Assembly (NCBI RefSeq): GCF_006345805.1
Contig: NW_021833239.1
Span: forward strand, 15,972 to 79,971
Length of the DNA stretch: 64,000 nucleotides
Direction: 5' to 3'
From: Octopus sinensis
Taxonomy: Eukaryota
A program made the position numbers and the translations under genes. The stretch's first letter is position 1; each line of letters opens with the position of its first letter. Shown here piece after piece: positions 4,061 to 63,016 of this stretch. The notes below the pieces were generated by a model. The model was not told the origin of the DNA. It did no database searches and saw only the letters and a program-made list of their open reading frames with translations.

Positions 4061-4146
4061 TTCCCTGATGAGAAGATTGCATTGTTTTACATAGTTTTAT
4101 TCCTTCTGGAATAATACCAATGTTTACTTCGAAATATATGTCAGAA
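4061..4146 (+). ncRNA. Decayed paralog of the 37314-37399 hammerhead
   Basis: TTCC-CTGATGA-GAAG..CTTC-GAAA-T-ATAT-GTC-AGAA; a mismatch in stem I and a wobble in stem III. Confidence 0.55.
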
Positions 4147-4233: not shown

Positions 4234-4491
4234 GTCTATCTATCTATCTATCTCTCTATCTATCTATCTATCTATCTATCTATATATATATATATATATG
4301 TCTGTCTGTCTGTCTGTCTGACTGCCTGTCTATCTATCTATCTAGCTAGCTATATATATATATATATATATATATAAATTCAGAGTGAATACTTGATAAA
4401 TGTAAGCACCTGTATATGCCAGCTAGTAGCATAGGTGAGAGGATATATGTATCAAATGAAATAAAATGAAAAACAGGACACAAAGGATGTC

Positions 4492-4584
4492 GCGGTACAT
4501 ATGTTCCGAGCTTTATAGAACAACTTATTCTTACATCAATGCGTAATCGACATAACAGATAGTTCAAAAGCCCTCTTCAGCCGC
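4492..4584 (-). ncRNA. Inverted twin hammerhead ribozyme (core GAAA->GGAA)
   Basis: Left arm of the palindrome; GCGG-CTGAAGA-GGGCTTT..AAAGCTC-GGAA-C-ATAT-GTA-CCGC. Confidence 0.6.
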
Positions 4585-4671
4585 ATGCAATTGCTACACC
4601 AAAGAATTGTATCACAAACCTTTCTCAAACCCTTCATAATGTGATACAAGTCTTTGGTGTAGCAATTGCAT

Positions 4672-4764
4672 GCGGCTGAAGAGGGTTTTTGAACTATCTG
4701 TTATGTCGATTACGCATTGATGTAAGAATAAGTTGTTCTATAAAGCTCGAAACATGTGTACCGC
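4672..4764 (+). ncRNA. Type I hammerhead ribozyme, intact core, long stem II
   Basis: GCGG-CTGAAGA-[GGGTTTT..AAAGCTC]-GAAA-C-ATGT-G-T-A-CCGC: stem I GCGG/CCGC, CUGANGA and GAA core, A15.1-U16.1, GUA cleavage triplet. Confidence 0.75.
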
Positions 4765-5389
4765 GACATCCTTTGTGTCCTGTTTTTCATTTTATTTCAT
4801 TTGATATATACTCTTTTACTCTTTTACTTGTTTCAGATATATATATATATATTATATATATATATATTTATAATAAGATTAGCTCGTATACGAGTGGGTA
4901 TATATTTGTAAAAATTGAAGTTTGAAAATGCTGCTATATTAGACAAATTTTAATTTTTATATATACATTATTTATTTAACATGTTTCGGTTCTTGAAATG
5001 ACGAACCTTATCAAAAAAAATTATATATAAAAAAGATAGTTCATGCTATCAAATATAAAAAATTTCATACATAATATTCAATAGAGTCAAACATAAAAAA
5101 TTCATATATAGTAAAGCGAGTCCATGCTATATGTTTAAAGAGTATGATGTAGTAGTTCATAGTGGTGATATGCATTCAATAGAGTCAAATATAAAAGATT
5201 CATGTTCTTGAAAAAGCGAGGAATTCATTTTAGATTTTACCTTGTGTTCCAATGGGAGCAACTGTAATGATTTTTGGTTGGTGTCTGTTCGTATAGTTTT
5301 GGTGAATTTGGTTTATATCAGCTCAGCTTAGCTGTCTCACTTGCATTTTTCACTGACGTCATATAGTTCCCAACCAATCAAAACTCAGT

Positions 5390-5830: not shown

Positions 5831-6553
5831 ATCTGCTCGTAGAGATCTTTTTATAATTTTTTTCCCTTTCCCTAAGACATATCTCTGTAAGTGTGAGTGA
5901 CTGTTTAAGGCAGCGGCCGTGGTAGAATTTCGCTTCTCCTTTTCGGAGGACCAATGTTTTGTTTTAATATTCCTGGCCCAGGGTGTTCAAACTTGGTCTA
6001 AATTTTTTGATGAAATACAGTTCTTTATTTTGGCGTTGCGTGAAGGTTACGCTGTCACTGAATTTATAAAGCGGGTAAGTTGTAAATTTCGGATTTACAT
6101 TTCCAGCACATCTATCTATGTGTCCGCTGACCGGTATTTTCCGATATTCAGGGTTTCTAATTTGTGATTTATGCACCGCCATCCTGTTACGTAAGCTATT
6201 TTTTGTATGGCCTATATACTGCCTATTGCAGCCTGCGCATGCTAAGACGTAAATTAAGTTTTCTGATGCGCAGGTGAAGTTTGCTCTAATGGTGAACTGA
6301 TGGCCTTGTTCTAGTATAAATTCTGAACCTTCTATCAAGATGACACAGATTCCGCAGTTGGGCCTTCCACATTTTCTAACTGCTGGTTTTGTGGTTGATG
6401 TTGAGTGCAGTTTAGCTTGGGTTAAAATCCTTTTCAAGGATTTTGGTTGCCGTTTACTTTTAATGATGGTGTGTGTTTCGAGGATCCGGTTCATCTTTGG
6501 GTCTCCCTTTAGTAGGGCTGTGCTTTGTAGTATGGTGCTGAAGGCCTCATTGT

Positions 6554-27779: not shown

Positions 27780-30035
27780 TATTATTATTATTATTATTAT
27801 ACACACAACAGATTAGACTGTTAGCAAAGAAAAATTCCTAACATCGAACTACAACAGGTAACCTTAAATGCCAAGAACCCTCCTAACCATCCTCGCCATT
27901 CCTAATAACACTGTTTTCTGGAACTGTACTAAATTAGGTTTTATCTCTAATTCCTTTATCCATCTGTTGAAAACTTAAGGGATAGTCCCTAATGCACCTA
28001 TAACTACTGGGATGCATTTTACTCGCACTTTCCATAGTTTCTGTAATTCTATGGCTAGGTCCTGCTACTTTCCTGCTTTTTCTATACCTCTCATTGAATT
28101 TTTCATCATTTGAGACTGTAAAGTCAATTATCTGGCATATTCTATTCTCTTTATCTACAACTACGAAATTAGGCTTTGTAACTTCTATTACTCTTCAGTC
28201 TGAATGTTAAAGTCCCCCAACACCTTATATTTCTGACTTTCTAGTAGTTTATTAGGTTCGTGTTTATACCATTCATCAGTATGGTCAGATCCAAGCTTTC
28301 TACATAACTCTCATTGTTGTCATGTCTTTTCTGTATTCGTTCTGTGCCAGCGTACTATATTCACTTACTATATGAGTAACGCTTTCCTCTATTGATTTGC
28401 ATAAACTACATTGGAAATCTACTTGACTTTTGTCCATCTCGGCCTTTGTCTAGTTAGTCCTTAATGCTTCCTTACCCTTCCGATATACTCTTCAATTTTC
28501 ATTTTCATTTTCATTTTCATTTTCATTTCTATAGTTAGTACTATGTCAGATTTTAATATTCCTAGATACTTATAACACTTTTAATGATTTTAATGTCTGA
28601 CCATCTGGTAATTGGATACGTAACTGTTGACTACATGTCCCCTTTTCATGACTAATATTGCACACTTATCCATGCCAAAATCCATGCCTATATCTTTGCT
28701 GAAGAATGTTACAGTCTGTATTAAGGAATCTATCCCTTTTACATTCTTACTAAAAAGCTTCAGATCATCCATGTAGAACAAATGGTTAGTTTTTGCCTTA
28801 CTATTTCTGAACTGATGCCTTGCCTTTGTCTTCCTTAATACTAAACTGAGAAGGATCAAACATAAGACAAATATTAAAGAGGATAACGAGTCTCCTTGGA
28901 AAATTCCTCTCGATATTAATCTTTCTTAAAACTGAGTAGAGATCTACTTTCCATTTCTTCATGCTAAAGCTAATTAATTCTCTTATGTTGTTTGCTTTGC
29001 TGAATATACTCAAACATTCATTTATACATGAGTGTGAGATCATGTCATAAGCGTTCTTGTAGTCTTCCCATGCTATTGTTCTTTCTAGCTTTTATTTCAT
29101 TTCGAATTTCTTCATTGACCATACGTTCTTCTAGCATTCTTCCTGTAACCTTTCTGTTCTTCTGGCAGTAAAGTCTTGTTACCAAGGAGCTCGTAAATGC
29201 TTTCTGAAAGCATTCCAGTCAACAGCTTCAACACTAATGGTAAGCTAGTGATTGGTCTATAATTGCTTGCTGTATTACATTAGCTTTTATCTTTCATAAG
29301 GAGTATTGTTCTTCCTCTGGTCATCCAATCTGGTATTATTCTTACATTAAGGCAATACTGAAGTTGTTCCCTCAGCCTCCCATGTAAACTACTAAATTTC
29401 TTTAACCAGTACCCTTGAACTAAATCTGGTCCTAGGTCCTTCCATTTCGGCATTTTTCCTAATACTTTACTCATTAATGCAATAGTTAGTCTTAGATCTG
29501 GCTGCTGCTTCTTACTCACTACTTCTGCCCTCACTTTTTAAAACCATATTGCATCTCCAAATATTACTCCAGAAGGTTCTAGCTTCTTCTATATTATATT
29601 TCTCATTTTCAGTACTTTCTTCTCCATTATTCATTTAGTTATAAAATCTACTCTGGTCTGTCTCAAATAATCTATTCTGTTGATACTGATCTATTCTTTT
29701 CTGATATCTGGAAAGCTTATCTGCTACTGCTATGATACGTTGTTTCACCTCTTCTATGAGCGTTCCAAATCCTTTCTCTTTGAGTAAGTATCTTTTCTCA
29801 AGAGATTTAAATCTTGTGTTTCCTAGATTATTCAGTTTCCAGGCTTCTATTCTACTCAGATCTTGTCTTAAAATCTTCACTTTATTTTGTAATCTCCTTT
29901 TTCACATTTGCTCTTTTCTAATCTTTCCTTGTAGAATATCTAATCTTCTAGTAACTACAACTCCTCCCATATATATCAATATGTTAGTGTCTCCTATATT
30001 TTTAGTGTTGTTTGTCTTTCCTACTGCCTCTTTGG
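27415..30035 (-). mobile_element. R4/Dong-clade LINE (RT + restriction-like endonuclease), disrupted
   Basis: PGPDLVQGYW, HLFYMDDLKLF, and C-terminal VILVVIGAMGAV..KTALLSTARILRRVL; (AAT)n tail. Confidence 0.85.
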
Positions 30036-30439
30036 TGATGTGAAACAAGATAACAAACTACACCCAAGTAGGCTACAGAAGTCAAAGAGCTGAAATGAGC
30101 ATTGCAAAGTGATTCGTTTTAAAATCTTGCCAATTTACCATCTTGGATAAGTAATATTTTTTTTTAATGGACACCAGTATTCTTTGATAATGTATTTAGT
30201 AGCTCTATGTCTATCTGTTTGTCTGTCATAATTCAGTTTATTTCAAGATTTCTTGTTAATAGAAAAAAAGCCGGTTTTTAACCTAGAGCCAAAGCTCATT
30301 CACTGAAATTTGAACATCAACAGGGTATTTCTGCATGTGTATGCATACATGTGCAGTATTTGGAGTCAGTACATGTACAGATTTGTATATTTTGTTTTAT
30401 GTGTGTATTCTCAGACATATAATTGCATGTCTAGACATG

Positions 30440-31090
30440 AACATAACTATTTAACTGATAAACTTCTGGAAAGTTTTACAGACTCATAGTTCCAGTGATG
30501 GCTTGGATCTGTAGTCTTCGGATCAGCTTTCTCCTTTCTGATTATAGAAGCTTAATTTCTCAAGATTGGTACATAGGCAGTGTGTTATCTATCTTAGCGC
30601 CCCAATAATTATAGGTATTAATGTGAACTTATAATCTGGGTAGAGTAACTGTAGATTTCCCAATAGTTCAGCGTAGGTATTTTCTTTTTCTCTGATCATT
30701 AGCTTCATGTTAACATCTGCCGAGCAGTTGATTTCCACCACTATGTATGTATGTGGAGTCTGTGATAAAGGATGTGAGATTTGTGCTTTATGAACGAGAA
30801 AAATAGTTGCTGTGCTTTCTGTGTTGTTCTTGATTTTAGATTCTGTTCAGCACTAACGAAGAAGACTTTTGATTAAAGGTGCTCCAAAAATGATAATATC
30901 GTGTTTTTGTATAGGAACTGCATTATTCAATATATTTATTTCAGGCCGCAGAGTGTGGCTTATGAAAAATTTGGTTGCTATTTCTAGTAGAGTAAGCGAT
31001 CACGTAGAAGCTCTCTCGCTAGTTAGTGATTTTAATACAAGTTGGTGTATGAAATCAAGTTTGCAGCAAATATGCTAACTGTATGACGAA
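30440..31090 (-). mobile_element. R4/NeSL-like RLE C-terminal remnant
   Basis: VVEINCSADVN..YAELLGNLQLLYPDYKFTLIPIIIGAL; a related remnant at 63715-64000(-). Confidence 0.6.
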
Positions 31091-31516
31091 TTTAATTTGA
31101 ATTTAGCTATAAAACTGATTCTATGGTGTAATGGTTATCACTTTGGGCTCTGAATCCAACAATCTGATTTCCAGTTTCGGTAGAACCTAATTTTTTCCAC
31201 AGTGGCTTTCCTGCATGAGTGCAGATGCATGGCCGAAATGCATCAAAAGAATAACGCATTGAATTTATTAACAGTAATTTAGGGTTGAATATAATTGGTT
31301 TCTGAATATTCTGCACAATTTTATATTTTCTTACATTTTTGACAAAAACTCAGAATCTCTTTCATAACACCACTGAAATGCGCTATAGCTTGTCTGGTGC
31401 TTTCTAGAATTAATACTGTATCACAAGATGTTAAAAATTGGCAAAGAATTGCTTTAGGATATTTTAGACAACTTTTTCGGTAAGATACAAATAAAATATT
31501 TGGAAGCCAGACATAC

Positions 31517-31716
31517 CTGGGAGTATAAACGTAAGGGTAGAGGCGAATGGTCCCAAAAATGAGATAAAATATCTAATATTTGATAATAACATAGCCATCA
31601 AAGTATTAGAGGCGATCCAGAACGATGTAATTACGATAGTATGAATATTTTCTTTTCGTTCTGTTTCTTCATCGGAAAATTTCCAGTATTGACACCATAA
31701 GCTCCGGACAGCAGAT
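31517..31716 (-). CDS. SLC38A7-like: SLC38A7/8-like transporter, visible exon 7
   Basis: tatttttcag|A..CCA G|gtatgt; SAVRSLWCQYWKFSDEETERKENIHTIVITSFWIASNTLMAMLLSNIRYFISFLGPFASTLTFILP resembles [34 protein letters not shown]; 200 nt, phase 2 to 1. Confidence 0.9.
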
Positions 31717-33195
31717 CTGAAAAATACTAAAAGGGTTATAGGAACTTTTGACTGATTATTGAAAATGCAGAAAAAAAAAAAAGCAAAAACTTTTCGATAG
31801 GGTAATTCTTAGCCCACTCTTAAATTTCAATTATATCACTCCAAATTCTAGAGCCAGCCATTGCCCACGATCGAGTATAGTTTGGTAAAATGTACCTATT
31901 TCTTTATTACCCACAAGGGGCTAAACATAGAGGGGACAAACAAGGACAAACATAGATATTAAGTCAATTACATCGACCCCAGTGCGGAACCGGTACTTAA
32001 TTTATCGACCCGAAAGGATGAAAGGAAAAGTCAACCTCGGCGGAATTTGAACTCAGAACGTAACGACAGACGAAATACCGCTAAGCATTTCATCCGGCGT
32101 GCTAACGTTTCTGCCAGCCCGCCGTTTGGCAACATGTACCATGCTTTCGCTAACTGTTTTAGGTGCCGGTGGAATCGTGAGCAGGTATAGATACCATCTC
32201 GACACTCTCACATTTGACTCAGCAACGCATACACAATGTGACTACTGCAGAGAGATCGAGAGAACGACTTGCTCAAGGACATAACACTCCGTCCACTCTG
32301 ACACTGAATGCACAATTTTATGATCGTGAACCATTAGGTAACGCACCATAACTACTGATCTGACCAGAAAATATAATGTAACTTCATTTTATTGCCTTGA
32401 CCATTAAGGTTTGTTAATCTAAAATTTAACGTAATTTATTCCGTTATTAAATTTCAGTTACATACAAACTAAAACAAAATATTTACATTAGGATTAAAAT
32501 GGCTCAATCGAATTACAGATTTTTTTAAAGTTATATTTTATGTTGTTTTTCAGAAAGTATTGCTTCCTCCATTGAACCAGAGAGCTCTGTTAAATGTTGA
32601 ACAGAGTGATATACATAAATAATTTTCTCAACCGGCACAGAAAAATACTCCTACAAAACAGCTATTTGTAAGTAAAGACTTACAAATCAGTACAGCAGCA
32701 AGCTTTCAGTCAACCATGTCTACTTATATGAGTTTCATTTCACAAGTAGAACTTCCTGTATCGATAAGTCGTTTTGGCCAAAACATATCGTTTTCTAGGA
32801 ATGCTTACAAGTCTCGTCAATTAAATATATTTTTATTTAGCAAAATATAGTCCTATCAGCAATAATAATTTAACAACTTCCAAAACATGCTAAGTGAACA
32901 CTTATTCCACTTCAAAAATGCAATATACATATATATATATATAGTTACTGGGACGTAAACACGCCAACATCGGTTGTCAAGCGATGGTGCGATGACAAAT
33001 GAACACACACACACATATATACGACGGGCTTCTTTCAGTTTCTGTCTACCATATCCCCTCACAAGGCTTTGGGTCACTATAATAAAAGACACTTACCCAA
33101 GGTGTCAAAATTAAATGCTGGAAAAGTTAAAAGAAAAGTTTTTTTAAAGAATATTTGCATACTTATATTAAGAGAAATGTTTTTAAAATAATATT

Positions 33196-33311
<116 letters not shown>

Positions 33312-34144
33312 GGGAAAATAAATTAATAATTTATACACCAAAGTAGTATTCGGCATGTTAAAGGACCATTTTCAGTAAACTTGAACAATATTTTTTTATA
33401 ATTATGAGTATAATTATAATTAGGGTTCAGCAAAAAAATTTGCTTCACCGCATACCGAACATTAGAATAGCAGCCAAAGAATCTAGCTATTTCTTCTACT
33501 ATAAGAAGAAACTCTCAGACAACATATATCAAAAACAATTCACGTAGGCAGAGAGGAAAAACAACGAAATTCACTCGGCATTTGATTAACTGTAGACGCG
33601 TTTCGGAGTTAGATAGATATGAAAAATGAAACAATCACATTTACATTCGGTCATTCGGCACTGTCATGCCTTTGGGTGTCAGAAGTGAAAGTAGAGAAAT
33701 CTGACGTCAGACGTCAACTTCGTGTATTTACGTCGTCTTTCGTTTATTTACGCCGTTTATTTACGTACCACTGAAATGCAAGTAAAAGCTTGTATGTATG
33801 TAGTTATGTATGTATGTATATATAATACATACATACACACATATATATAATATACATGTATATATACATATATATATATATATTTAATACATACATATAT
33901 ATAATATATACATGTATTTTTACCGCCTTTAGTCGCACAAATCGACCCCAGAACTTATTCTATCGGTCTTTTTCTTAACCACTATACATTATATACATAC
34001 ATACAGATAGATAGATAGATACACACACACACACATATAATAGATATAAATGTGTACGTGTGTACATTTTCAGAAAAAATTCATACATTTTAAACAATAT
34101 CATAGCATTTCTCTTATTTTTTACATGAAGTTTTCGAAAAATGA

Positions 34145-34282
34145 ATTTAGAATGTAAAAATCAAATATATCAAATTAATAAACGCAAATTATTTAGAATG
34201 TAAAAATCAAATATATCAAATTAATAAACGCAAATTATTTAGAATGTAAAAATCAAATATATCAAATTAATAAACGCAAATT
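34145..34282. repeat. 3 x 46-bp tandem repeat downstream of the Merlin ORF
   Basis: atttagaatgtaaaaatcaaatatatcaaattaataaacgcaaatt at 34145, 34191 and 34237. Confidence 0.9.
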
Positions 34283-34381
34283 ATTTTCAAATATCATTTT
34301 CAACGGTGAGATTATCAAAATATAAACTTGAAGTTAAGTTTAAAAATAAATGCGATACTCATTCTGTCTTGATACTTATGC

Positions 34382-35284
34382 TCAAATACATGGATATAGC
34401 TGTCGAATTTGTTCTATCAACTTCCCGAATATATCATCCTTAAATTCATAGCGCCACATGAATTCGATGAGATGGGTCTGAAGTAAATTTCTGGCTGTTC
34501 CACATTCTCTCCTATTTCGAGTCTTTACGTGTTTCCATAAACTTCTATGTGGTTGGTTGTGGCAAATGTTACCGGATCAACAAAATTTATAGAATGATTC
34601 ACGGTCAAATGTCTGTATCCTAGCTGACTGAGTGTATTATACGAACGCCAAAGGTCGGATATTATTGTTGTACCAGGCAATATACGCTCGCGTATAATCT
34701 GTAATAGAGTGTCCGCTGTTCGATTTTCAACTGCCACTAAAATACATCTTCTACTATCTCTTTCTAATGCACCAAACACCCATTGCGTTTTAACCCGATG
34801 GCCAACATGATATTTTCTCTTAACAAACGCAGTTTCATCTATTTCAACGATTCTATGGGTCCTCCCAGTTTAATATTCTGTGCAACATAATATTCTGCAC
34901 ATACATCGCGGCAAAAATTCCTCCAATCGGTTACCGCTACATTTGCTAAATGACATTCCTGTCCTATTCCTTTTGCTAAATCTTCTTTGGCCCAGTAAAA
35001 CAAAATATCTATGATCTGTTGACACTTCGATTTGCTATTTTCTAAAATGTTCCTTTTCTAATTGACACGGATTTTCTACAAGGTCTTCCACACGACCATA
35101 TTATTTCATCAGATATACTTTTTTTCGTTACTTCTCTCATGGTAGCTCCACACGATGTACATATTTTCTGGGTATTCAAAAGGCCATGTCTCTTAAGCCA
35201 ATTAATGCTATCTGCTGTTGTAGCAGTGGAGACGGCAATATCGCGGTGACTAATTCCTCTTGAACTTGGATATGCAAAAGCCAT
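34382..35284 (-). mobile_element. Merlin/IS1595-like (ISXO2) DDE transposase with two single-base frameshifts
   Basis: CTSC..C zinc motif, GGPHRIVEIDET, WVFGALER, ILPGTTIISDLWRSY, HLTVNHS, TNHIE. Confidence 0.88.
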
Positions 35285-35286
35285 AT

Positions 35287-35682
35287 TAAAAATTGTTTAG
35301 CACGTGTTGATATCACACTGAAAGTTTCTAACTGAATAAATTTCAAAGTTTGAATTACGCACGTGGTGGTCAGTGGTCATTCTGATTGGTGTATGTAATC
35401 GCGGTGATGGTCATGGGGGTTCATTTGTGCAGATTTTGGTGTGATTTCTTTTTTAAAAACAATAATGAATAATGCAAGAATATATTTATTCTTGCATTAT
35501 TCATTATTGTTTTTAAAAAAGAAATCACACCAAAATCTGCACAAATGAACCCCCATGACCATCACCGCGATTACATACACCAATCAGAATGACCACTGAC
35601 CACCACGTGCGTAATTCAAACTTTGAAATTTATTCAGTTAGAAACTTTCAGTGTGATATCAACACGTGCTAAACAATTTTTA
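35287..35682. repeat. Perfect palindrome, 196-bp arms, 4-nt loop
   Basis: Arms read as exact reverse complements around tatt at 35483-35486. Confidence 0.92.
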
Positions 35683-36395
35683 TTTACGCCGTTAAATATT
35701 TACTTAAATTCCTTAATATGGAATCTGGATGTTAAATGGTAAGGGACATTGAAAACCTCTAGAGCACTAGTAGTCTATATTCCTCCTACCCCTCTAACTT
35801 CAACCTACTAGCTTTTTGCTATAATACATTCAAATATATCTAAACTGAATTCTTCAAAATGGGAATGGGTTTATGGTTTTGACATTTGTACTACCCCTTC
35901 CTATATCTATAAATAGAAAAAATTCTTGTTTGTCTCCATTCAACCAAGAATAAAAACCCCTCCCCACTGATAGATCTAAATAACAAAGTGAACTCAATGA
36001 TAAAATCTACAGTCAGAGAGTGAACATACTACTATCATGTTCTTAAGAATGAAATCAACCTCTCTGTCTGTATATCTACCCTCTTTATAATGTTGGTAAA
36101 TGAAATATGGATAAGAATGTGCATTGTCCGTTTAATTGGAAATTTCTATAAGTGACTGAAGATTTCTCGACATTTTAAAACAGATTTAATACTTACAGTG
36201 TTTAATAAAATGAAGAAGCATGAAATTGTACTACTCTACCTTGGATATACATGTTGCATATTTTGCTTATTTATATTATATATACACACAAACACACACA
36301 TAGAACCTCGGAGACCCTGTAAAGAGTCATGAGCACTGTCTCCTTTCCAGAAGAAAAGATATAAGAATACACTCATAAAGTCACGCATACACACA

Positions 36396-36448
<53 letters not shown>

Positions 36449-36520
36449 GCACACACTTACACACACACACACACACACACGCATGCATGCACGCTTACAC
36501 AAACTTATGCATATACATAC

Positions 36521-36783
36521 CTTCCTGGAAAGAATATAATTGTGTAGCTGCTAATTCCCTTGACAGCAAGTAGGATGACTGCTATCAATACTGGTACGTC
36601 TGGGTTTTTGTATGAAAGGAGGATATCACTGTGCACTTCAGAGCCGAACGACAATGATCCAAAGACTCCCATCAGCATGTAAAAGAACGTAGCGAGAGCA
36701 AAAGCTCCGCACAGGACCTTGGTATATGACCGCAAATTTCGATGCTTCATACTGGAGTAGATTGGAACAGAACTTACTTGTGC
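36521..36783 (-). CDS. SLC38A7-like: SLC38A7/8-like transporter, visible exon 6
   Basis: tttactattgcag|GCA..GGA AG|gtatgt; AQVSSVPIYSSM..GVFGSLSFGSEVHSDILLSY..SSYTIIFFPGR resembles CHVSSVPVFNSM..GFLTFG..DVLLSY..TSYPILHFCGR; 263 nt. Confidence 0.93.
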
Positions 36784-37046
36784 CTGCAATAGTAAATATT
36801 ATTTGTTTATTTAATACATAACATTCATTTAATATATAATGCAGGCTTAGGTAAAGAAATTGCTTCCCAACTACATGGTTCCGGGTTCAGTCCCACTGCG
36901 TGGCACCTTGGGCGAGTGTCTCCTAGTATAGCCTCAGGCCAACCAAAATCTTGTGAGTGGATTTGGAAAACAGAAACTGAAAGAAGTCAGTCATATATAC
37001 ATATATATATATATACATACACATATATACACACACACACATATAT

Positions 37047-37102
<56 letters not shown>

Positions 37103-37143
37103 TATATATATACATACATATATGTATGTATATACATACATAT

Positions 37144-37279
<136 letters not shown>

Positions 37280-37313
37280 ATGGAGTTAAACGCAGGTGTT
37301 ATTCAAATCTTAC

Positions 37314-37399
37314 TTCTGACATATGTTTCGAAGTAAACATTGGTTTTACTCCAGAAGGAATAAAATTATGTAAAACAATGCAATCTTCTCATCAGAGAA
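37314..37399 (-). ncRNA. Type I hammerhead ribozyme, intact core, long stem II, intronic and sense to the SLC38 gene
   Basis: TTCT-CTGATGA-GAAG..CTTC-GAAA-C-ATAT-G-T-C-AGAA; stem II extended by cattgttttac/gtaaaaccaatg; GUC triplet; palindromic loop 3. Confidence 0.8.
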
Positions 37400-37523
37400 T
37401 GAAAGAAACCCAACACATCAATAAGACATTTTCACAGAATGTTGATGACTGCGTATATGATGAAGGGAACGCTATCAATTTTTTTAAACCTTAGTGTATA
37501 TATACTGACTTTTTTTACCACTG

Positions 37524-39258
37524 CAGATATAAAATCAGAGGCGGCGACGATAGATTACATCGATATAAAGGAAGACGATGTAATCAAGGCTATAGATGAA
37601 ATGAAAACAGACTCAGCTACTGGCCCCGATGGATTCCCGGCAATCCTCCTAAAAGCATGTAAGAGAGTCCTAGCAAGACCACTGCAGTTCCTCTTTCAGA
37701 GCTTCCTTGCAGCTGGCAAACTCCCAAGAAAACTGAAAGAAGGTAAAATATGCCCCATTCATAAAGGAGGTAGCAGAGCTATAGACCTATCTCTCTGACC
37801 TCACACATCAGCAAGGTCATGGAACGAATAGTCAGAAGGAAGCTGATCACCTTCCTTGAAGAGAATGACTTGCTGCCCGATACCAAACATGGTTTCCGAC
37901 CAGGGAGAAGCTGTTTAACTCAGCTCCTACAACACTATGACTGGGTGCTGAAACGGCTGCTCAACCACTCAAATGTGGAAGTGATATATCTCGACTTTGC
38001 AAAGGCCTTTGATAAAGTCGATCATGGAATGATATGTCACAAACTGCGTGATCTCAACATAGTTGGAAAACTGGGAGAATGGCTTCATGACTTTCTGAAA
38101 GATAGAAGTCAGGTGGTAGTGGCCAATGGGGCCACTTCCATTAACACGCAAATAGTGAGCGGTGTTCCGCAGGGCACTGTTCTGGGACCACTACTGTTCA
38201 TAATGGCCCTCTCAGACATGCCCTCAGCCACGCAGAGAGCCACGATCACAAGTTATGCAGATGATACAAAAGTTTCACAGGCAATACAGAACCCTGAGGA
38301 CACTAAACACCTGCAATGTGAGCTAGACAAAATATACAAGTGGGCCGAAAAGAATAGCATGCAGTTCAATGCTGAAAAGTTTCAAGCTCTATACTATCAG
38401 CATGCAAAACTGAATGCAATACCCAATCAATACACTGGACCCGGAGGAATAGCAATCCCAGAGGCACAATCAGTGCGTGACCTAGGTATTTACATGAGTG
38501 ATGACGCGACCTTTCGTGTACATGTTGCTAAATTGGCAATGAAATGTAGACGACTGGCCGGATGGATCCTCAGAACCTTTAGAACAAGAGAACAAGAAAC
38601 CATGATGGTCCTCTGGAGGACACTTGTCCTAAGCCACTTTGACTACTGCTCTCAGTTATGGTCACCATCCAGTGTCAAGTTGATCACAGAGCTCGAGGCG
38701 ATCCAACGTAGCTACACGAAGAAGATAGCCTCTATGCAGAATGTAAGCTACTGGGAAAGACTCAAGAGATTAAAACTATATTCCCTGGAGCGTAGGCGGG
38801 AAAGATATGCCATAATATACATCTGGAAGATCCTGGAGGGAAGTGTCCTGAACTTTGGCATCGAGAGTTACGCAAATGCCAGAACTAGGCGCCACTGCGT
38901 GGTGCCTAGGACTCCAAACTTGCCATCAAGATGTAGGACAAGATTCTGTGATAGCCTGAGCTTCCGAGGCCCACAGCTCTTCAATATCCTCCCGAAGAAC
39001 CTGAGAGACCTGCATGGGGTGGATGCAGATGTCTTTAAAATGAAGCTGGATCTCTTCCTGTCAGGTGTCCCAGATGAACCAACTTCACGGCAGGAGGGGC
39101 AGATGAGGGCAGCTGCATCGAACTCTCTCATGCACCAAATAGCAGTTGCTAGAAAGCCTTCATGAAGTGAAACCAAGTAGCAACACCAAATGGCGGTGCC
39201 CCAGCATGGCCACAGCTCATAAGCTGAAACTAGAATCAATCAATCAATCAATCAATCA

Positions 39259-39269
<11 letters not shown>
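37524..39269 (+). mobile_element. 5'-truncated CR1-group LINE (RT ORF nearly intact) with (AATC)n tail
   Basis: 448-aa ORF with YLDFAKAFDKVDH, GVPQGTVLGPLLF, YADDTK; one small deletion near 37780. Confidence 0.9.
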
Positions 39270-43236: not shown

Positions 43237-45404
43237 CTGTGGAAACAAGTAAAATAAATAACAACATTAAAAATAAATCAAAAATATATGATAATAATTG
43301 TCAACATATTTACAAAGCTGGGAAAGGAAGAGTCGAGTATATCGACCAAATATTTTATTTATCGATCTCTGAATGATGAAAGGTAAAGTTGACTCCAGTG
43401 GTGGTTCACATACTCGATACCACTAGCCACTTTGGGGTCTTCTACATAGAGTAGAGAGCACTTACATGCGTGTAATTGCTCTTACATACGCAAACATATC
43501 ACTTCCCCTTCTCTCAGATTTTCTGACACCGAAATTTCATTGTCAGGATATATCAGAGTAACAATAAAGCACATATATGTTAGAGGGCGAGGCGGCGAGC
43601 TGGCAGAAGCGATAGCGCGCCGGGCGAAATGCTTAGCGGTATTTCGTCTGTCGTTACGTTCTGAGTTCAAATTCCGCCGAGGTCGACTTTGCCTTTCATC
43701 CTTTCGGGGTCGATAAATAAAGTACCCGTTTCGTATTGGGGTCGATGTAATCGACTTCTTCCCTTTGTTTGTTCCCTCTATATTTAGCCCCTTGTAGGCA
43801 ATAAAGAAATATATATATTAGAGGGCGACAAAGATAGCTTTTGACTATTTCTTCGATGCGGAACATGGAGATTGCTATTCCAAAGATAATTCGTGTGGTT
43901 TTAGATACAGATGTGAACAAATCATTCGATGTGTTCGGATAGAAAGGGCGCGCAGTGAAAATAAATCCTCATTTTGATGAATAGCTGTCTGTAGGTGCTA
44001 TTCTGGGAAGTTGTGCGCATTTTTAGAACAGTTCCCGACCACTTAGGAATAGCAATGGATCAGAGATAATGGGTCTCGTACCAACTCCATAACTTTTCGC
44101 AGTTGTTGGCAGTAGAGAAGCGATAACTGTATGTAAGAAACGGTTAGAGATGAGTAACATTGCGTGGGGCAAATCTTCTGCTTTACATCGTCATCGCAAT
44201 GGGCTTTATGGGTTCGTGTCATACACTTCGTAGACGTTTATCATGACGCTGAAAACTGGGAACATTCTCTGATACGTTGACTGACAAGGTGTGGTGTTAC
44301 AGAGGAAGGACACAAGCAAAGGAAACATCGTGGACAGCATCTGATCCATAGCTCTGCTGCGTGTAGAGTTTTGAGAGTTAGTGCAGGGCAGTGCTCGCGA
44401 AGAGACTGACGCTTGTCGTACTTGGTGTAGCTAGAAGCGCACAGACTTGTGCTATTTCCATCAGATTTATTCACAACCACCTCCACCTCATGCCAGTCAT
44501 CGTTGCGAAATTGGCTAAAATAAAACTTGATCTAGTGGGGCTCAAATACCTTGGCATCAATTCAAAGCTTTCGGTAATACTTAGTGGCTCTTCTCAGTGT
44601 AGTTAGTTTCGATATCATTTCAGAGGATGGATTTCATCAATCTATAGTAAAAACTGCTCTGTAGTCAGGATAAATGGCCACCTGTGTGGTCCATTAGGAA
44701 TCATGCCCAATCAGCCAGAGATTGAAGCATGTATAGGGGTTCCTGGATAGTGAACAGCTGTTGTTACAGTTTGATAGGCACATCTTTTCACAGTTGATCT
44801 CTTTCATTGAACTGCAGTCCCGGATCAAGTGAAGGTCAATATTGGGTATTTGACGCTACCAGGAGCTCGCAGTTTTCTACCAATCAAGCAAACGGTGATA
44901 TATCTCATGCTTTATAGAATTAAAGGTGGACAAGAGTATCAACGTGCAGTAGATTACATGCGTCGACGAAGATTAACTGAAAATTCTATTCCGGCCAGCC
45001 AGGGTACATAGACACTTTTCTCAAAATCTCCTTGCCTAGCATTGCCATTTCGGAATAAAGTCTAAAAGCTGCCGAAGCTGCATGAAATGTGCACAGACAA
45101 GGAAACCTTTCAATACACACTAGATCTATATCGCGGCGTTGTATAATTATATTGAATAGTGCCGAATTTTTGTGCAGTAATTACGTTGACGCTGATTTCT
45201 TATGGAATTATGTTGAATAGGTGTTGTCTTAGAGGAATCTAGCTATGTACCAAATCGAAGTACTAATGTTGTATTTTAAGCTCCTGTTCCTTTATTTCTG
45301 ATAACCTGACAAGTTTGAGAAAATTTGCTAAAACAAATATTTTGATTAACGAAAGGAAAAGAATTGAACAATGTTAGTGAGCATATAAGAAGTGGAGAAC
45401 TTAC

Positions 45405-45497
45405 GGCGTTTTAACTGGACTAGAAGGTGAATGTGTTTGTGTATATTTCACAAAAACCAATAAGCTGACATACAGAAATGCTGCAGTACCGACAGTA
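45405..45497 (-). CDS. SLC38A7-like: SLC38A7/8-like transporter, visible exon 4
   Basis: ttattatag|T..ACG CC|gtaagt; STVGTAAFLYVSLLVFVKYTQTHSPSSPVKTP resembles SFLSVVGTWYVTAIVIIKY; 93 nt, phase 2 to 2. Confidence 0.85.
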
Positions 45498-47049: not shown

Positions 47050-47475
47050 TATTTACGTGGCTGTGTGGTAAGTAGCTTGCTTACCAGCCACATGGTTCCG
47101 GGTTCAGTCCCACTGCGTGGCACCTTGGGCAAGTGTCTTCTATAGCCTCGGGCCGACCAAAGCCTTGTGAGTGAATTTGGTAGACGGAAACTGAAAAGAA
47201 GCCTGTCGCATATATATATATATATTTTTTTTTTTTTTAATATATATATATGTATGTATATGTGTGTGCGTGTTTGTGTGTCTGTGTTTGTCCCCCCAAC
47301 ATCGCTTGACAACCGATGCTGGTAGGTTTACATCCCCGTTACTTAGCGGTTCGGCAAAAGAGACCGATAGAATAAGTACTAGGCTTACAAAAGAATAAGT
47401 CCTGGGGTCGATTTGCTCGACTAAAAGGCGGTGCTCCAGCATGGCCGCAGTCAAATGACTGAAACAAGTAAAAGA
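47050..47475 (+). mobile_element. tRNA-derived SINE (tggctgtgtggtaag..gggttcagtccc family)
   Basis: Further copies at 47727-48125(+), 24360-24680(-), 52135-52500(-), 3575-3790(-), 32945-33100(-), 36845-36990(+), 6590-6720(-), 57245-57385(-). Confidence 0.8.

Positions 47476-49621: not shown

Positions 49622-49627
<6 letters not shown>
48620..49627 (+). mobile_element. Solo LTR (TG..CA) with ATAT flanks
   Basis: atat|tgttacggg..gaaccacaaca|atat; homologous to 1617-2725. Confidence 0.8.
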
Positions 49628-49687
<60 letters not shown>

Positions 49688-49776
49688 CATACATACATAC
49701 ATACATACATACATACATGCATGCATGCATGCATACATACATACATACATACATACATACATACATACATACAACA

Positions 49777-49808
<32 letters not shown>

Positions 49809-50393: not shown

Positions 50394-50532
50394 CTGATAT
50401 ATTTCAGATAGTTAATAAATTTGTGAAAGCAGAATGGTAGGAGGATTATCATAATAATTACTGTTACGAACTCTCTTCGTGTATACCATACATGATGATT
50501 GCAGTAAAAGTTATGGTCGAGGAAAATGGTAA
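50394..50532 (-). CDS. SLC38A7-like: SLC38A7/8-like transporter, visible exon 3
   Basis: tttgtttcag|TT..ATC AG|gttagt; FTIFLDHNFYCNHHVWYTRREFVTVIIMIILLPFCFHKFINYLKYI resembles PWYTDRKFTISL..ILPLS..KYAS; 139 nt, phase 1 to 2. Confidence 0.9.
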
Positions 50533-50561
50533 CTGAAACAAAACAAAAAGAAAGTCTTTAA

Positions 50562-51484: not shown

Positions 51485-51628
<144 letters not shown>

Positions 51629-51663
51629 TATATATATAGATATATATGCATATATATATATGC

Positions 51664-59790: not shown

Positions 59791-61487
59791 CACACTTAGA
59801 TGAAGTTAAAGGTTGCTACATCGCCATCATCTTCATAGGATCTTCAGAGAACCTAGCCATAGCCGCAATGAACTTTGCAAAAATTTCTGATCTCAATCAA
59901 TCTTCTAACAAGTAATAATGATTTCAAATCTTGGCACAAGGCCATTAGTTTTAAGGGGAATGAGGTTAAAGGATTACATACCCGTCCAATGCTCAACCAG
60001 TACTTACATTATCGACCTGAAAGCATGAACGGCAAAATCAACGGAATTGAACTCAGGACGTAAAGGAAGGGAAGAAATGTCGCTATGCATTTTGTCCAAC
60101 ATGCACATGATTCAGCCAACTCGCCGATGTAACGATTCTGTTAGCTCCTGTCTGATTAGTAACAATGGTATCAAATTTTGGCACAAGGTCTGCAATTCCA
60201 GAGGAGGTCTATGTTGGTTACTAGCACTACGAGAATCATTGATTAACGATTATTCACGAGTCTTAACTTAATGCTTAACTGGTATTTATTTTATAGGCAC
60301 AAGGCCTGAAATTGAGGGGAGGAGCCTAGTCGATTATATCACTCCATTGCGTAACAGGTATTTATTATCGATTCCTAAAGGATCAAAGGCAAAGTCGACC
60401 TCGGCGGAATTTGAATTCAGAACGTAAAGACGGGCGAAATGCCGCTAAGCATTTTACTCGGCATGCTAAAGATTCTGCCAGCTTACCGCCTTCCTCTGAT
60501 TAGTAATAACGAAAGTAAAAACTATTGATAATTAATGGATGGTTATGTATGATAAAGAATACGAAGAAACATAAATAGAAAAAAATAACATACTATGTCC
60601 CTCAACTCAGAGTCAAAAAATATCCTTCAGATGACACTTTCAGTGTAACAGCTAGCTCTGCACAACTCCAGTAACACATTCTTAAACTCATTCTCTGTGT
60701 ATTTATAACCCAATGAAAAAACTCAATACACGCTCTATCAAAATATATACCCAACACCGTAATATTTGAATAACCGTTAAATCCTATAGCGGAGAAAAAG
60801 GAAATGCCATCGCGCTCTTACTCTTTCTCTCCGTTTATACTTCAACTTTTGGAGAACAATAAAAATGGTTCAATGCATTTCTGTATCTACCTCAATTCTT
60901 GTAAATGGTTTGAAATTCAACATCACCCTGAAAAGAATCGGTTTAGATGGAAATAGGTAATGAGATTGAAATCTTATGATTTTATTATCTACAGAGTTAA
61001 TGCAATATGTCTTAAAAACGAATCTGCGGCTGAACTAAAATTATTGCTTCAAAGAAACTAAATATGAAATGGACTTTCTGCACGCACTTCTTCATAAATA
61101 AAAGAGTCGGTCCAATGGCGGTTGATTTAATTTTCATTTTCATTTTCATGTTCGATCGCTTGTGATTGCCGCTTTAATAATGTGTGCATAACTGGAAAAT
61201 TCCTGTAGCGACGGCTTTATAAGAAGCCGATTTTGGCGCGATTAAGCCGAAAACAATTCGGTCGTAACTCGCTTCAGTCGTGGACAATTCTCCTCTCAAG
61301 CTGTTCTCATAGCTCCATACTCAAGCCAGCGCGATTTTCCTGATAGCTATTTTCACTGCTATATATTTGACGCTGTCAAATTTATTCAGATTTAAAGTTT
61401 CATAGGAAATAGAAATGATACCACTCAATGATTTGTTCAGTATATATATATATATATAAAAATATATAAATTATAATTTTTACTTAC

Positions 61488-61686
61488 ATTCTTCTATTTG
61501 GTCACCAATCAATACCATTAAACTGGTGCAGTAAAGATATATACTAACAAAAATAAATACAGATGTCAACGCACGACCTTTCTCTCCATAGAAATCAAAC
61601 ATAATATCTTGATAACTTGATCTTTGGGTTTTATCTGAGGCATATGCTACAATAAACATTGAAATGAACGAACAACCACAAATAAT
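61488..61686 (-). CDS. SLC38A7-like: SLC38A7/8-like transporter, visible exon 2
   Basis: catttcag|ATT..GAA T|gtaagt; IICGCSFISMFIVAYASDKTQRSSYQDIMFDFYGEKGRALTSVFIFVSIYLYCTSLMVLIGDQIEE resembles ILAYCS..TYQEVV..CG..IIIGDQ; 199 nt, phase 0 to 1. Confidence 0.9.
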
Positions 61687-63016
61687 CTGAAATGAAATAA
61701 TAAAAGGAAAATACGTATTTAAAAACGTAGAGATGTGATGTTCTTATATTTCAACATTCATCATCTTTAAACTCGTAAGTTCGTTATCATGACAGTACAG
61801 TCTCTTTAACCATGTAATCTCATACCGTATTGTCATATCTGCATTATATTCCATACAATGTGAGAAATTGATATCACAATAAGATAATATCTAAGTATTT
61901 GTTTGGGTCAAATATCTATAGACATTACAGTTATTTAACAGAGAAACATTTTAAAGTTTGCTATATATATTTAGACAGTAAAAATGATTTTAGAAATAAC
62001 TACAACGGAGCAGGCTCTACGTGGTCACGCTACCTTATTAGAAAAGTAGCTTAGTCTTCACTTAATCATATTCTACCAAATTAAATAAGGAAATAATATT
62101 TTGGATATTGTAGCCCTACATACTGCTAAAAGGCGAGGAGATCGCGACTGAAATGTCACTGGTGCCTCTTTAGCAAGCCGTCTACCTGGACATTTATACT
62201 TCAGCGTGAAGTCTAACTCACACGTTATCTCTAACGGTAAGCAGTAACTGTAACCCAAAACTCTAACTATAACTTAAAAACCCTGACCCTGACCCTTAAC
62301 CCTAATCCAAGATCATAACATAACCCAAAACCCTAACCCCATTCCTAACTCAGATCAGGTCATCTGACAATCTGGACTACAGATACTGCGGTAGATCGCA
62401 CGCAAAAGTAGCAACATGGCATTAATCTAATCATAGATTTGTTCGAGCAGGGCTGAATTGGGGATAAGCCACAACAACTGCATAAAGACAAGCCAATGAG
62501 TATGATCCTACGCTGTCGGTCATATTTCTCAAACCACACCAACACTCTTTAACAGAAAAGCTTCTGTGTAAAATAGTCCTATCTTTAAAATAGGATGTAT
62601 GTCGGTTGATGAGGATAGCATTGAAACTTAACTTAGTTCATAAATATGCATTAACCAGTATGATTGTGATCTCTTAAAGATTTCAAGATTAGAAAGTAAG
62701 CAATTCTTATATCTTTTCTTATGTGTATTAATACCAAACGATGAAATATAAATTGAACTTGGCGATCAAATATTTTGATCGTCCGTTCTCAGCTGCATTT
62801 CTGCACCACAAATGCATGAATAAAATACACAAGCAGCTCATTGATAAGAAATACAGGGTGGGTGTCTCATAATGATGGGGCACATTTTGAACGCAAGTAA
62901 ATAGAACTGGAACAAGCTCAGATATTAAGGAAAGTGTATAATAGTAGATCACTTATATGTGCCCCATTATTATGAGACCTTGTATTTGTACACGAAGAAA
63001 CAGAAAATATACTTAC

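What the first reader, a model, noticed from the sequence alone, without database searches (positions are those of the whole stretch)
37314..37399. Core-intact hammerhead ribozyme lying sense inside an intron of the SLC38 transporter
Seen in sequence: all conserved core nucleotides (CUGAUGA, G10.1-C11.1, GAA, A15.1-U16.1, C17), a 4-bp stem I, an extended stem II and a palindromic CATATG stem/loop III. It is on the gene's strand, about 530 nt upstream of the exon 6 acceptor. Established: hammerheads with palindromic loop 3 can cleave as dimers, and intronic hammerheads exist in amniote genes. Inference: it could nick the pre-mRNA and affect splicing or transcript level.
Basis: partly seen in the sequence, partly recalled or inferred. 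Interest (0 to 1): 0.7.

Follow-up and report, generated by a model that had tools for sequence, protein, structure and literature searches.

The report
Retroelement-type hammerhead motif in a transporter intron
A complete hammerhead ribozyme motif does lie, in the sense direction, inside an intron of an amino-acid transporter gene, but it looks like the weak, dimer-dependent kind that retrotransposons scatter through invertebrate genomes, and nothing here suggests that the gene uses it.

Summary
On the minus strand, 37399->37314, there is a type-I hammerhead with every core nucleotide intact. It has a 4-bp helix I, a 59-nt extended helix II, a palindromic CAUAUG helix III and a GUC cleavage triplet (C17 = 37318). 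It is sense to an Aa_trans/SLC38-like gene and sits 534 nt upstream of an exon acceptor.

A strict descriptor gave 0 hits in 3000 shuffled windows, so it is not a chance match.

The proposed role in the host gene is not supported:
- The copy is solitary, so no cis dimer can form.
- Its hammerhead fold is predicted 8-9 kcal/mol above competing folds, as a monomer and as a dimer.
- Rfam models do not match it.
- The only other copy (4061-4146) belongs to a rearranged segmental duplicate of the gene. It has diverged at the neutral rate (5/86) and has lost the 1.1-2.1 pair.

A second, unrelated hammerhead with the same unusual architecture lies in a mobile inverted pair (4446-4810) that inserted into a (TA)n microsatellite. 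Penelope-like endonuclease ORFs are also present in the window.

Best reading: a relic of a Penelope-type or retrozyme-type retroelement, and a new member of a known kind. Its multi-copy family status could not be tested, because no cephalopod genome was reachable.

The parts
37314..37399 (-). Type-I hammerhead motif 'A'. Helix I: 37399-37396 / 37317-37314. CUGAUGA: 37395-37389. Helix II: 37388-37330. GAA: 37329-37327. A15.1: 37326. Palindromic CAUAUG: 37325-37320. U16.1: 37319. C17: 37318, with the predicted cut between 37318 and 37317.
   Evidence: Sequence read. Located by regular expression. Descriptor hit. Constrained folds.
37283..37533 (-). Unique sequence block of about 250 nt that carries the hammerhead. 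About 134 nt lie upstream of the motif and about 31 nt downstream. It is the presumed retroelement remnant; its 5' edge abuts a later LINE insertion.
   Evidence: Extent of homology with the paralogous copy at 3936-4186. No other similar sequence in the window.
36993..37282 (-). Compound microsatellite directly 3' of the element: (UCUA)n with a (UCUG)n stretch, then (UA)n/(UG)n. The paralogous copy has the same compound structure.
   Evidence: Tandem Repeats Finder; sequence.
36521..36784 (-). Aa_trans (SLC38-like) coding exon ('exon 6'), with its acceptor AG at 36786-36785. C17 lies 534 nt upstream.
   Evidence: Pfam PF01490, E = 5.5e-14, profile 213-295. Splice sites read.
61483..61743 (-). 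Upstream Aa_trans exon. It shows that the hammerhead lies inside the transcription unit.
   Evidence: Pfam PF01490, E = 1.1e-6, 28 bits, profile 37-113.
37537..39262 (+). 5'-truncated LINE (RVT_1 ORF 37819-39165, (AATC)n tail 39234-39262), head-to-head with the hammerhead element. It is absent from the paralogous copy, so it is a later insertion.
   Evidence: Pfam RVT_1, E = 1.6e-23; tail; absent next to copy B.
4061..4146 (+). Copy 'B' of the same hammerhead, inside a rearranged segmental duplicate of the gene. The core is intact, but U2.1->C breaks the 1.1-2.1 pair, C15.2->U gives G.U, and there are three changes in helix II.
   Evidence: Collinear inverted duplication 3943-9340 <-> 37522-24992.
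4446..4810 (.). Inverted pair of a second, unrelated hammerhead element. 'C' (4671-4765, + strand) has an intact core: CUGAAGA ... GAAA CAUGUG UA. C' (4585-4491, - strand) has GGAA in place of GAAA, so its core is broken. (TA)n flanks both sides. The pair is absent from the corresponding microsatellite of the main gene copy, so it is a true insertion.
   Evidence: Descriptor hit; 92% inverted repeat; sequence; coordinates; hammerhead-like MFE; absent from locus A.
5964..6494 (-). Fragment of a Penelope-like element ORF: a CX5CxxC finger plus a GIY-YIG endonuclease domain. It lies inside the same 2.2-kb insertion cluster in the duplicated microsatellite.
   Evidence: Pfam PF01541, E = 2.1e-6; translation; 18 homologues, 66% to 38% identical.

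Best explanation
This is a genuine type-I hammerhead motif carried by a short retroelement remnant, of the kind borne by Penelope-like elements (PLEs) and their non-autonomous derivatives ('retrozymes').

The remnant is about 250 nt here and possibly about 340 nt in the paralogous copy. It sits against a (TCTA)n/(TA)n microsatellite in an intron of an Aa_trans/SLC38-like gene.

In the life of such elements the hammerhead cuts multimeric or tandem transcripts. With a helix III of only 2 bp and a palindromic loop, it does so as a double hammerhead. Two copies pair through ACAUAUGU to form an 8-bp helix III.

The intronic copy is solitary and its helix I is only 4 bp. Its sequence also offers stronger competing pairings: UUACUUC with GAAGUAA, UUCUC with GAGAA, and UCUGAU with GUCAGA.

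It is therefore expected to be spliced out with the intron, essentially uncut. At most, cleavage would be rare, slow and without consequence for the gene.

Shown here: the motif, its strand, its intronic position, its non-random nature, the lack of a cis partner, the unfavourable predicted folding, neutral-rate divergence of the paralogous copy, and a mobile hammerhead element of the same architecture plus PLE ORFs in the same window.

Inferred: the retroelement origin of this particular copy, and its inactivity.
For: - Motif and coordinates.
- Non-random: 0 hits in 3000 shuffles with the strict descriptor. Two independent hammerheads observed against 0.25 expected with the loose descriptor.
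- Shape matches published retroelement hammerheads: type I, short helix I (4-5 bp), enlarged helix II, G10.1-C11.1, a 1-2 bp helix III with a palindromic loop, mostly found as dispersed single motifs (PMC4209133; PMC7229834).
- A second hammerhead (C/C', 4446-4810) has the same rare architecture: a helix II of about 64 nt, CAUGUG/CAUAUG at helix III, and the motif 35-50 nt from the element's end. It is demonstrably mobile: it is an inverted pair flanked by (TA)n, present in the duplicated microsatellite and absent from the original. Inverted, 5'-truncated pairs and a bias toward (TA)n insertion sites are PLE hallmarks (PMC8557442).
- PLE GIY-YIG ORFs are in the window. PLEs are abundant in Octopus (PMC13282606).
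- About 43% of Xenopus retrozyme copies lie in introns (bioRxiv 10.64898/2026.07.22.740005), so an intronic location is ordinary.
- Inactivity:
  - The only other copy is on the other strand, 33 kb away.
  - Folding penalty is +8 to +9 kcal/mol for the monomer. The dimer hammerhead fold is -37.4 against a dimer MFE of -54.4 kcal/mol.
  - PLE minimal hammerheads are inactive as monomers and weak as dimers in vitro.
  - Copy B has diverged at the neutral rate.
Against: - No PLE ORF adjoins this copy.
- It is not in a tandem array.
- It lacks the bulged nucleotide between A9 and G10.1 that is typical of PLE minimal hammerheads.
- No independent (transposed) second copy of the A-type sequence was found. 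The one other copy arose by segmental duplication, so multi-copy family status is unproven.
- Seven contigs carrying relatives of the window's PLE endonuclease showed no hammerhead and no similarity to the A or C elements.
- Secondary-structure energies ignore the tertiary stabilisation of the hammerhead core and co-transcriptional folding, so inactivity is predicted, not shown.
Confidence: 0.62

Rival explanations
1. It is a domesticated intronic ribozyme. The hammerhead is kept by the host gene and cleaves the SLC38 pre-mRNA, as a monomer or by pairing of two transcripts. This would modulate splicing of the downstream exon or transcript level, as proposed for the amniote RECK, CTCL and DTNB intronic hammerheads.
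For: It is in sense orientation in an intron, 534 nt from an acceptor, with an intact core. The core is also intact in the paralogous copy. The block formed by the hammerhead plus 81 nt upstream differs at 7/167 = 4.2%, against a 9.9% mean for the duplication. There is precedent in amniotes (PMC6155905).
Against: - The 4.2% figure is within the range of the adjoining duplicated blocks (4.0-6.2%). 20% of all 160-column windows of the duplication are at least 95% identical.
- The hammerhead itself differs at 5.8% (p = 0.28).
- Copy B sits in a broken, rearranged gene copy, so any conservation there cannot be due to a splicing function.
- Copy B has lost the 1.1-2.1 pair.
- The predicted fold is strongly disfavoured.
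- No canonical loop1-loop2 contacts can be recognised.
- From my own knowledge, not tested here: ribozyme cleavage inside an intron need not stop splicing unless cleavage is fast (Dye et al. 2006; Fong et al. 2009).
Confidence: 0.06
2. It is a chance hammerhead look-alike. AT-rich intronic sequence happens to contain CUGAUGA, GAAA and short complementary runs in the right order. No ribozyme ancestry is involved.
For: - The loose descriptor hits 0.25 times per shuffled window.
- Helices I and III are minimal (4 bp and 2 bp).
- No Rfam match.
- The MFE is not the hammerhead fold.
- No independent family copy was found.
Against: - The strict feature set gave 0 hits in 3000 shuffles.
- Helix II is a long, well-paired hairpin that closes exactly on G10.1-C11.1.
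- The palindromic CAUAUG and the long helix II recur in an unrelated mobile hammerhead 33 kb away.
- Retroelement hammerheads number in the thousands per invertebrate genome. The strict test implies at most tens of chance matches per genome.
Confidence: 0.1
3. It is a hammerhead-bearing SINE-like element moved by a LINE rather than by a PLE. In this reading the (TCTA)n run is the element's own microsatellite 3' tail, as in CR1/L2-type LINE-SINE pairs, and the element resembles the Schistosoma Sm-alpha type.
For: The element ends in a (TCTA)n tail that is shared by both paralogous copies. LINEs with microsatellite tails are present, for example (AATC)n at 39234-39262. The Octopus vulgaris repeat paper reports SINEs as 11.6% of the genome, with 893 'unclassified SINE' families among recently active insertions.
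Against: No tRNA, 5S or 7SL-like head was detected. No LINE in the window shares its 3' end. The tail may simply be the target microsatellite.
Confidence: 0.17

Closest known systems
Minimal and variant type-I hammerheads of Penelope-like elements (Cervera & de la Pena 2014, PMC4209133)
   Same: Type-I topology. Helix I of 4-5 bp with no defined loop 1. Enlarged helix II. G10.1-C11.1. A tiny helix III with palindromic 15.2-16.2 and loop 3, which implies a dimeric mode of action. Mostly dispersed single motifs. PLE ORFs lie nearby in the genome.
   Different: Helix II is far longer here: 59 nt, with about 20 bp in three segments, against 6-8 bp. There is no bulged nucleotide between A9 and G10.1. 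It is not inside a recognisable pseudo-LTR next to an RT/GIY-YIG ORF.
Metazoan non-LTR retrozymes (Cervera & de la Pena 2020, PMC7229834; Li et al. 2026 bioRxiv)
   Same: AT-rich non-coding unit of about 250-340 nt carrying one type-I hammerhead with a weak helix III. The published families include monomeric dispersed copies, many of them intronic.
   Different: There is no tandem repeat here. Helix I is 4 bp, not 6. Helix II is not the canonical 4 bp plus loop 2, so the conserved loop1-loop2 tertiary contacts cannot be assigned.
Conserved intronic hammerheads of amniotes (HH9 in RECK, HH10 in CTCL; de la Pena & Garcia-Robles 2010, cited in PMC6155905)
   Same: Sense orientation inside an intron of a protein-coding gene. 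Thought to derive from retroelement hammerheads.
   Different: Those are defined by deep conservation across orthologues and by canonical loops with tertiary contacts. They are also matched by Rfam models RF02275 and RF02277. None of these holds here, or could be shown here.
Newt satellite 2 and viroid-type double hammerheads (Forster et al. 1988, cited in PMC6155905)
   Same: A helix III too short for monomer activity. Its palindromic sequence allows two units to form an extended helix III.
   Different: Those act on tandem multimeric transcripts. This copy is alone in its transcript.

Membership tests
Hammerhead ribozyme, type I | Conserved core: C3 U4 G5 A6 N7 G8 A9, G12 A13 A14, A15.1-U16.1, H17 | tested here: met
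   CUGAUGA 37395-37389, GAA 37329-37327, A15.1 37326, U16.1 37319, C17 37318.
Hammerhead ribozyme, type I | Three helices around the core in type-I order (helix I open, helices II and III capped), with a G10.1-C11.1 pair | tested here: met
   Helix I is 4 bp. Helix II closes on G37388-C37330. Helix III is 2 bp plus an AUAU loop, or an 8-bp intermolecular helix.
Hammerhead ribozyme, type I | Match to curated covariance models (Rfam Hammerhead_1, _3, _II, HH9, HH10) | tested here: not met
   No hammerhead hit at gathering score, or at E<=10 in 1.1-kb and 126-nt searches. The C-type hammerhead is also missed, so the long helix II is the likely cause.
Hammerhead ribozyme, type I | The hammerhead fold is thermodynamically accessible | tested here: not met
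   Folding penalty +8 to +9 kcal/mol, P about 1e-6 to 1e-7. The dimer hammerhead fold is 17 kcal/mol above the dimer MFE. The energy model leaves out tertiary contacts.
Hammerhead ribozyme, type I | Loop1-loop2 tertiary contacts of natural fast-cleaving hammerheads | tested here: inconclusive
   There is no capping loop at the canonical distance. Internal loops lie after 4 bp in both helix I and helix II, but no known contact motif can be assigned from sequence.
Hammerhead ribozyme, type I | Site-specific self-cleavage after H17 | not testable with these tools
   Needs in vitro transcription, or mapping of RNA ends.
PLE-borne hammerhead | Located in the pseudo-LTR flanking an RT plus GIY-YIG ORF | tested here: not met
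   No PLE ORF adjoins it. The nearest are at 20096-20952 and 5964-6494. Most published PLE hammerheads are also solitary.
PLE-borne hammerhead | Short helix I, enlarged helix II, palindromic positions 15.2-16.2 and loop 3 | tested here: met
   4 bp; 59-nt helix II; CAUAUG.
PLE-borne hammerhead | Unpaired nucleotide between A9 and G10.1 | tested here: not met
   G10.1 follows A9 directly.
PLE-borne hammerhead | Member of a multi-copy consensus family with covariation | tested here: inconclusive
   Only one other copy was found, and it arose by segmental duplication. Metagenome and GTDB scans were empty or unrelated. No cephalopod genome was available.
Non-LTR retrozyme | Head-to-tail tandem repeats of about 170-400 nt, each with a hammerhead | tested here: not met
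   There is a single unit. No direct repeat of the unit was found.
Domesticated intronic hammerhead (amniote type) | Sense orientation inside an intron | tested here: met
Domesticated intronic hammerhead (amniote type) | Conservation beyond the neutral rate across species | not testable with these tools
   No orthologous loci were reachable. The paralogous copy shows neutral-rate divergence.

The most novel reading that the evidence does not exclude
The hammerhead may have been co-opted by the transporter gene. It would act as a slow, or dimer- or factor-dependent, self-cleaving switch in the intron upstream of exon 6. That would make it the first domesticated intronic hammerhead described outside amniotes.

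A lesser novelty is also not excluded. The A and C motifs may define a class of hammerheads with a helix II of about 60 nt that current Rfam models cannot see.
Probability: 0.05. Interest if true: 0.6.

Novelty: new member of a known kind. Interest (0 to 1): 0.22.

Why it matters
If the reading is right, the finding is ordinary. Retroelement-borne hammerheads are scattered by the thousand through invertebrate genomes, and many land in introns.

Two modest points of value remain:
- Hammerheads have not been explicitly described in cephalopods in the literature that could be searched here.
- Two unrelated motifs in one 64-kb window share a helix II of about 60 nt that all Rfam hammerhead models miss. 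Standard annotation may therefore undercount this class in such genomes.

Only evidence of conservation in orthologous introns, or of cleavage in vivo, would make the locus interesting for gene regulation.

Tried and rejected
1. Rfam at gathering score and at E<=10 on the window, on 1.1 kb, on 126 nt and on the C/C' region. There were no hammerhead hits, only spurious microRNA-like hits on microsatellites and on the inverted repeat.

2. I first took copy B (3943-4180) as proof of a dispersed repeat family. I rejected this after searches showed that it lies in a collinear, inverted segmental duplicate of the gene's 3' part.

3. I first read the junction at 6847 as a LINE template-switch chimera. 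I rejected this after one search showed that 6854-9340 continues the same duplication (it matches 29199-24992).

4. Metagenome scan with a 20-mer of the motif. The 11 hits are all unrelated coding sequence.

5. GTDB genome scan with a 24-mer: no hits.

6. Protein search with the exon-6 peptide, to reach orthologues: nothing found. Exact look-up of the LINE ORF: not on record.

7. Protein search with the PLE endonuclease ORF gave 18 homologues. Seven contigs were fetched (L012-L018). None has a hammerhead with an intact or one-mismatch core. None resembles the A or C elements beyond a 19-nt chance-level match.

8. Full-text search for the A and C hammerhead strings: no paper holds them. The Octopus vulgaris repeat paper has no sequence supplement.

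9. I considered a covariance model built from A, B, C and C'. I dropped it because MAFFT misaligns H17 and helix I, and there was no further sequence to search.

10. I looked for hammerheads 3' of the two PLE ORFs in the window and found none.

11. I tested for excess conservation of the hammerhead between the paralogues. It is not distinguishable from the background of the duplication.

Full report
**Observation**

The finding's coordinates, read on the minus strand (37399->37314), give 5'-UUCU-CUGAUGA-GAAG...CUUC-GAAA-CAUAUG-U-C-AGAA-3'. All invariant hammerhead nucleotides are present:
- C3-A9 at 37395-37389
- G12-A14 at 37329-37327
- A15.1 at 37326
- U16.1 at 37319
- C17 at 37318

G10.1 (37388) pairs with C11.1 (37330). 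Helix I is 4 bp. Helix II is a 59-nt imperfect hairpin: 4 bp, a 4x4 internal loop, 5-6 bp, a bulged C, 9 bp, then a UUCU loop. Helix III is the palindrome CAUAUG. In a monomer this gives only A15.1-U16.1 plus C-G and a tetraloop. Between two copies it gives an 8-bp helix, ACAUAUGU. The topology is type I.

**Gene context**

The gene is on the same strand. Pfam Aa_trans matches lie on the minus strand at three places:
- 61483-61743, profile positions 37-113
- 36521-36784, positions 213-295, E = 5.5e-14
- 31467-31808, positions 296-373

The motif is therefore intronic and sense. C17 is 534 nt upstream of the acceptor of the 36784 exon.

**Is it more than chance?**

A loose descriptor expects 0.25 hits per shuffled window. 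It finds two independent hits in the real window. A strict descriptor built on the listed features gave no hit in 3000 shuffles. That descriptor was written after the fact, so I use it only to say that chance matches of this quality should be rare: at most tens per genome.

Rfam's five hammerhead models do not match it at any threshold. They also miss the second hammerhead in the window, which shares the helix II of about 60 nt. I therefore attribute the silence to the architecture.

**Surroundings: the second copy is a paralogue, not a transposed copy**

The motif sits in a unique block of about 250 nt (37533->37283). A compound microsatellite, (TCTA)n/(TCTG)n/(TA)n, follows at 37282->36993. 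A 5'-truncated LINE on the plus strand (37537-39262, RVT_1 ORF, (AATC)n tail) abuts the block's 5' edge.

A second copy of the block lies at 3936-4186 on the plus strand. I first read this as proof of a repeat family, but it is not. Searches show two large duplications:
- 3943-9340 is a collinear, inverted, gapped duplicate of 37522-24992. [quoted passage not shown]
- 9964-17649 is a direct duplicate of 43826-63712.

The window thus holds the gene plus a rearranged partial second copy. Copy B is a paralogue made by segmental duplication.

Substitution divergence of the duplicated blocks is 4-16%, with a mean of 9.9%. The hammerhead differs at 5 of 86 positions (5.8%, p = 0.28). The differences are:
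- U2.1->C, which breaks the pair next to the cleavage site
- C15.2->U, which gives a G.U pair
- three changes in helix II

The 167-nt block of hammerhead plus 81 nt upstream differs at 4.2%. This is within the range of the adjoining blocks (4.0-6.2%). One fifth of all 160-column windows of the duplication are at least 95% identical. There is no sign of constraint. Copy B also lies in a broken gene copy, where a splicing function could not act.

**A second, mobile hammerhead with the same architecture**

In the duplicate, the microsatellite has received 2.2 kb of insertions that the original lacks.

One insertion is an inverted pair (4446-4810, arms 92% identical, (TA)n on both sides). Each arm carries a different hammerhead:
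- C (4671-4765, plus strand) reads UGCGG-CUGAAGA-[64-nt helix II]-GAAA-CAUGUG-UA-CCGCG and has an intact core.
- C' (4585-4491, minus strand) has GGAA in place of GAAA.

C shares no sequence with A outside the core, but it has the same rare design. Helix II is very long. Helix III is CAUGUG or CAUAUG. The motif sits 35-50 nt from the end of the element. Its MFE is already hammerhead-like.

Beside the pair lies a PLE ORF fragment with a CX5CxxC finger and a GIY-YIG domain (5964-6494). Another is at 20096-20952. Inverted, 5'-truncated pairs, a bias toward (TA)n targets, and hammerheads are described hallmarks of PLEs (PMC8557442; PMC4209133).

**Mechanism**

Published work shows that metazoan type-I hammerheads with a 1-2 bp helix III and a palindromic loop cleave as double hammerheads on multimeric transcripts. 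PLE minimal hammerheads are inactive as monomers and only weakly active as dimers in vitro.

Here no second A-type copy exists on the gene's strand within the window. A heterodimer with C' cannot close helix I, because the helix I strands differ; this follows from the geometry of the double hammerhead and is my inference.

Nearest-neighbour modelling puts the monomer hammerhead fold at -12.8 kcal/mol, against an MFE of -21.3. The ensemble penalty is +8 to +9 kcal/mol, giving P of about 1e-6 to 1e-7, and this holds with 0, 10 or 30 nt of flank. The double hammerhead comes to -37.4 kcal/mol, against a dimer MFE of -54.4. By the same test the penalty for C is only +2.6 to +3.

The competing pairings are UUACUUC with GAAGUAA, UUCUC with GAGAA, and UCUGAU with GUCAGA. 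These energies leave out tertiary contacts and co-transcriptional folding, so inactivity is a prediction.

From my own knowledge, not tested here: ribozyme cleavage inside an intron does not prevent splicing unless it is fast (Dye et al. 2006; Fong et al. 2009). A slow hammerhead would therefore have little effect even if it were active.

**Comparison with known kinds**

The motif meets the sequence and topology definition of a type-I hammerhead. It fails the Rfam models and the accessibility test.

It resembles PLE and retrozyme hammerheads in helix I, helix III and G10.1-C11.1. It differs from them in four ways:
- helix II is much longer;
- it lacks the bulged base after A9;
- it has no adjoining PLE ORF;
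- it is not in a tandem array.

It shares only its intronic, sense position with the amniote HH9 and HH10 ribozymes, which are defined by deep conservation.

Intronic location is itself ordinary. About 43% of Xenopus retrozyme copies lie in introns.

**What could not be done**

No cephalopod genome or proteome was reachable:
- The exon peptide found nothing.
- The LINE ORF is not on record.
- A metagenome scan gave 11 unrelated hits.
- A GTDB scan gave none.
- Relatives of the PLE endonuclease were found in metagenome and Logan contigs. The seven contigs fetched carry no hammerhead and no similarity to A or C.
- No paper holds either hammerhead sequence.
- A search combining 'hammerhead ribozyme' and 'cephalopod' returned nothing specific.

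Multi-copy status of the A-type element, and conservation in orthologues, remain the decisive open tests.

**Verdict**

The best explanation is a relic of a PLE- or retrozyme-type retroelement (confidence about 0.6). The rivals are a LINE-dependent SINE-like carrier (0.17), a chance look-alike (0.10) and a domesticated ribozyme (0.06). It is a new member of a known kind and of low interest.

Noticed in passing
window 3943-17649 versus 24992-63712: The window holds the Aa_trans/SLC38-like gene plus a rearranged partial second copy. 9964-17649 is a direct duplicate of 43826-63712 (the 5' exons). 3943-9340 is an inverted, gapped duplicate of 37522-24992 (the 3' part). The stretch 29200-36712, which carries most of exon 6 and the exon at 31467-31808, is missing from the copy. 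Substitution divergence per block is 4-16%.
   Followed up: partly
window 4446-4810: An inverted pair of a second hammerhead element, flanked by (TA)n. It inserted into the duplicated microsatellite after the duplication. One arm has an intact core (CUGAAGA...GAAA, GUA triplet) and the other has GGAA. Helix II is about 64 nt, and Rfam does not detect the motif.
   Followed up: partly
window 5964-6494 (-) and 20096-20952 (-): Fragments of Penelope-like elements. The first has a CX5CxxC finger plus a GIY-YIG domain. This is the feature Craig et al. 2021 describe for the Neptune and Nematis clades. The second is broken by stop codons. Both lie beside (TA)n runs. No hammerhead was found 3' of either.
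   Followed up: partly
window 5400-5840: Tandem repeats of about 80 nt, with UGAUGACGU boxes, lie downstream of the PLE endonuclease ORF on the minus strand. Their nature is unknown.
   Followed up: no
window 31117-31188 (+): A tRNA-Gln(CTG) gene or tRNA-like sequence (Rfam 40.3 bits; also called by ARAGORN). It lies antisense inside an intron of the transporter gene, about 280 nt from the exon at 31467-31808.
   Followed up: no
window 35287-35682: A near-perfect palindrome: 396 nt, 99.5% self-complementary.
   Followed up: no
window 36860-37012, 47077-47225, 47757-47910, 57223-57381, 6573-6714: A tRNA-derived SINE-like family (GGCCTGAGGCTATACTAG...GGGACTGAACCCGGAACC) with at least five copies. 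One copy lies in the same intron, between the hammerhead's microsatellite and the exon acceptor.
   Followed up: no
window 37537-39262 (+): A young LINE insertion with a 448-aa open RT ORF and an (AATC)n tail. It is absent from the paralogous copy. It sits exactly at the 5' edge of the hammerhead element and may have removed about 97 nt that the paralogue keeps (3846-3942).
   Followed up: partly
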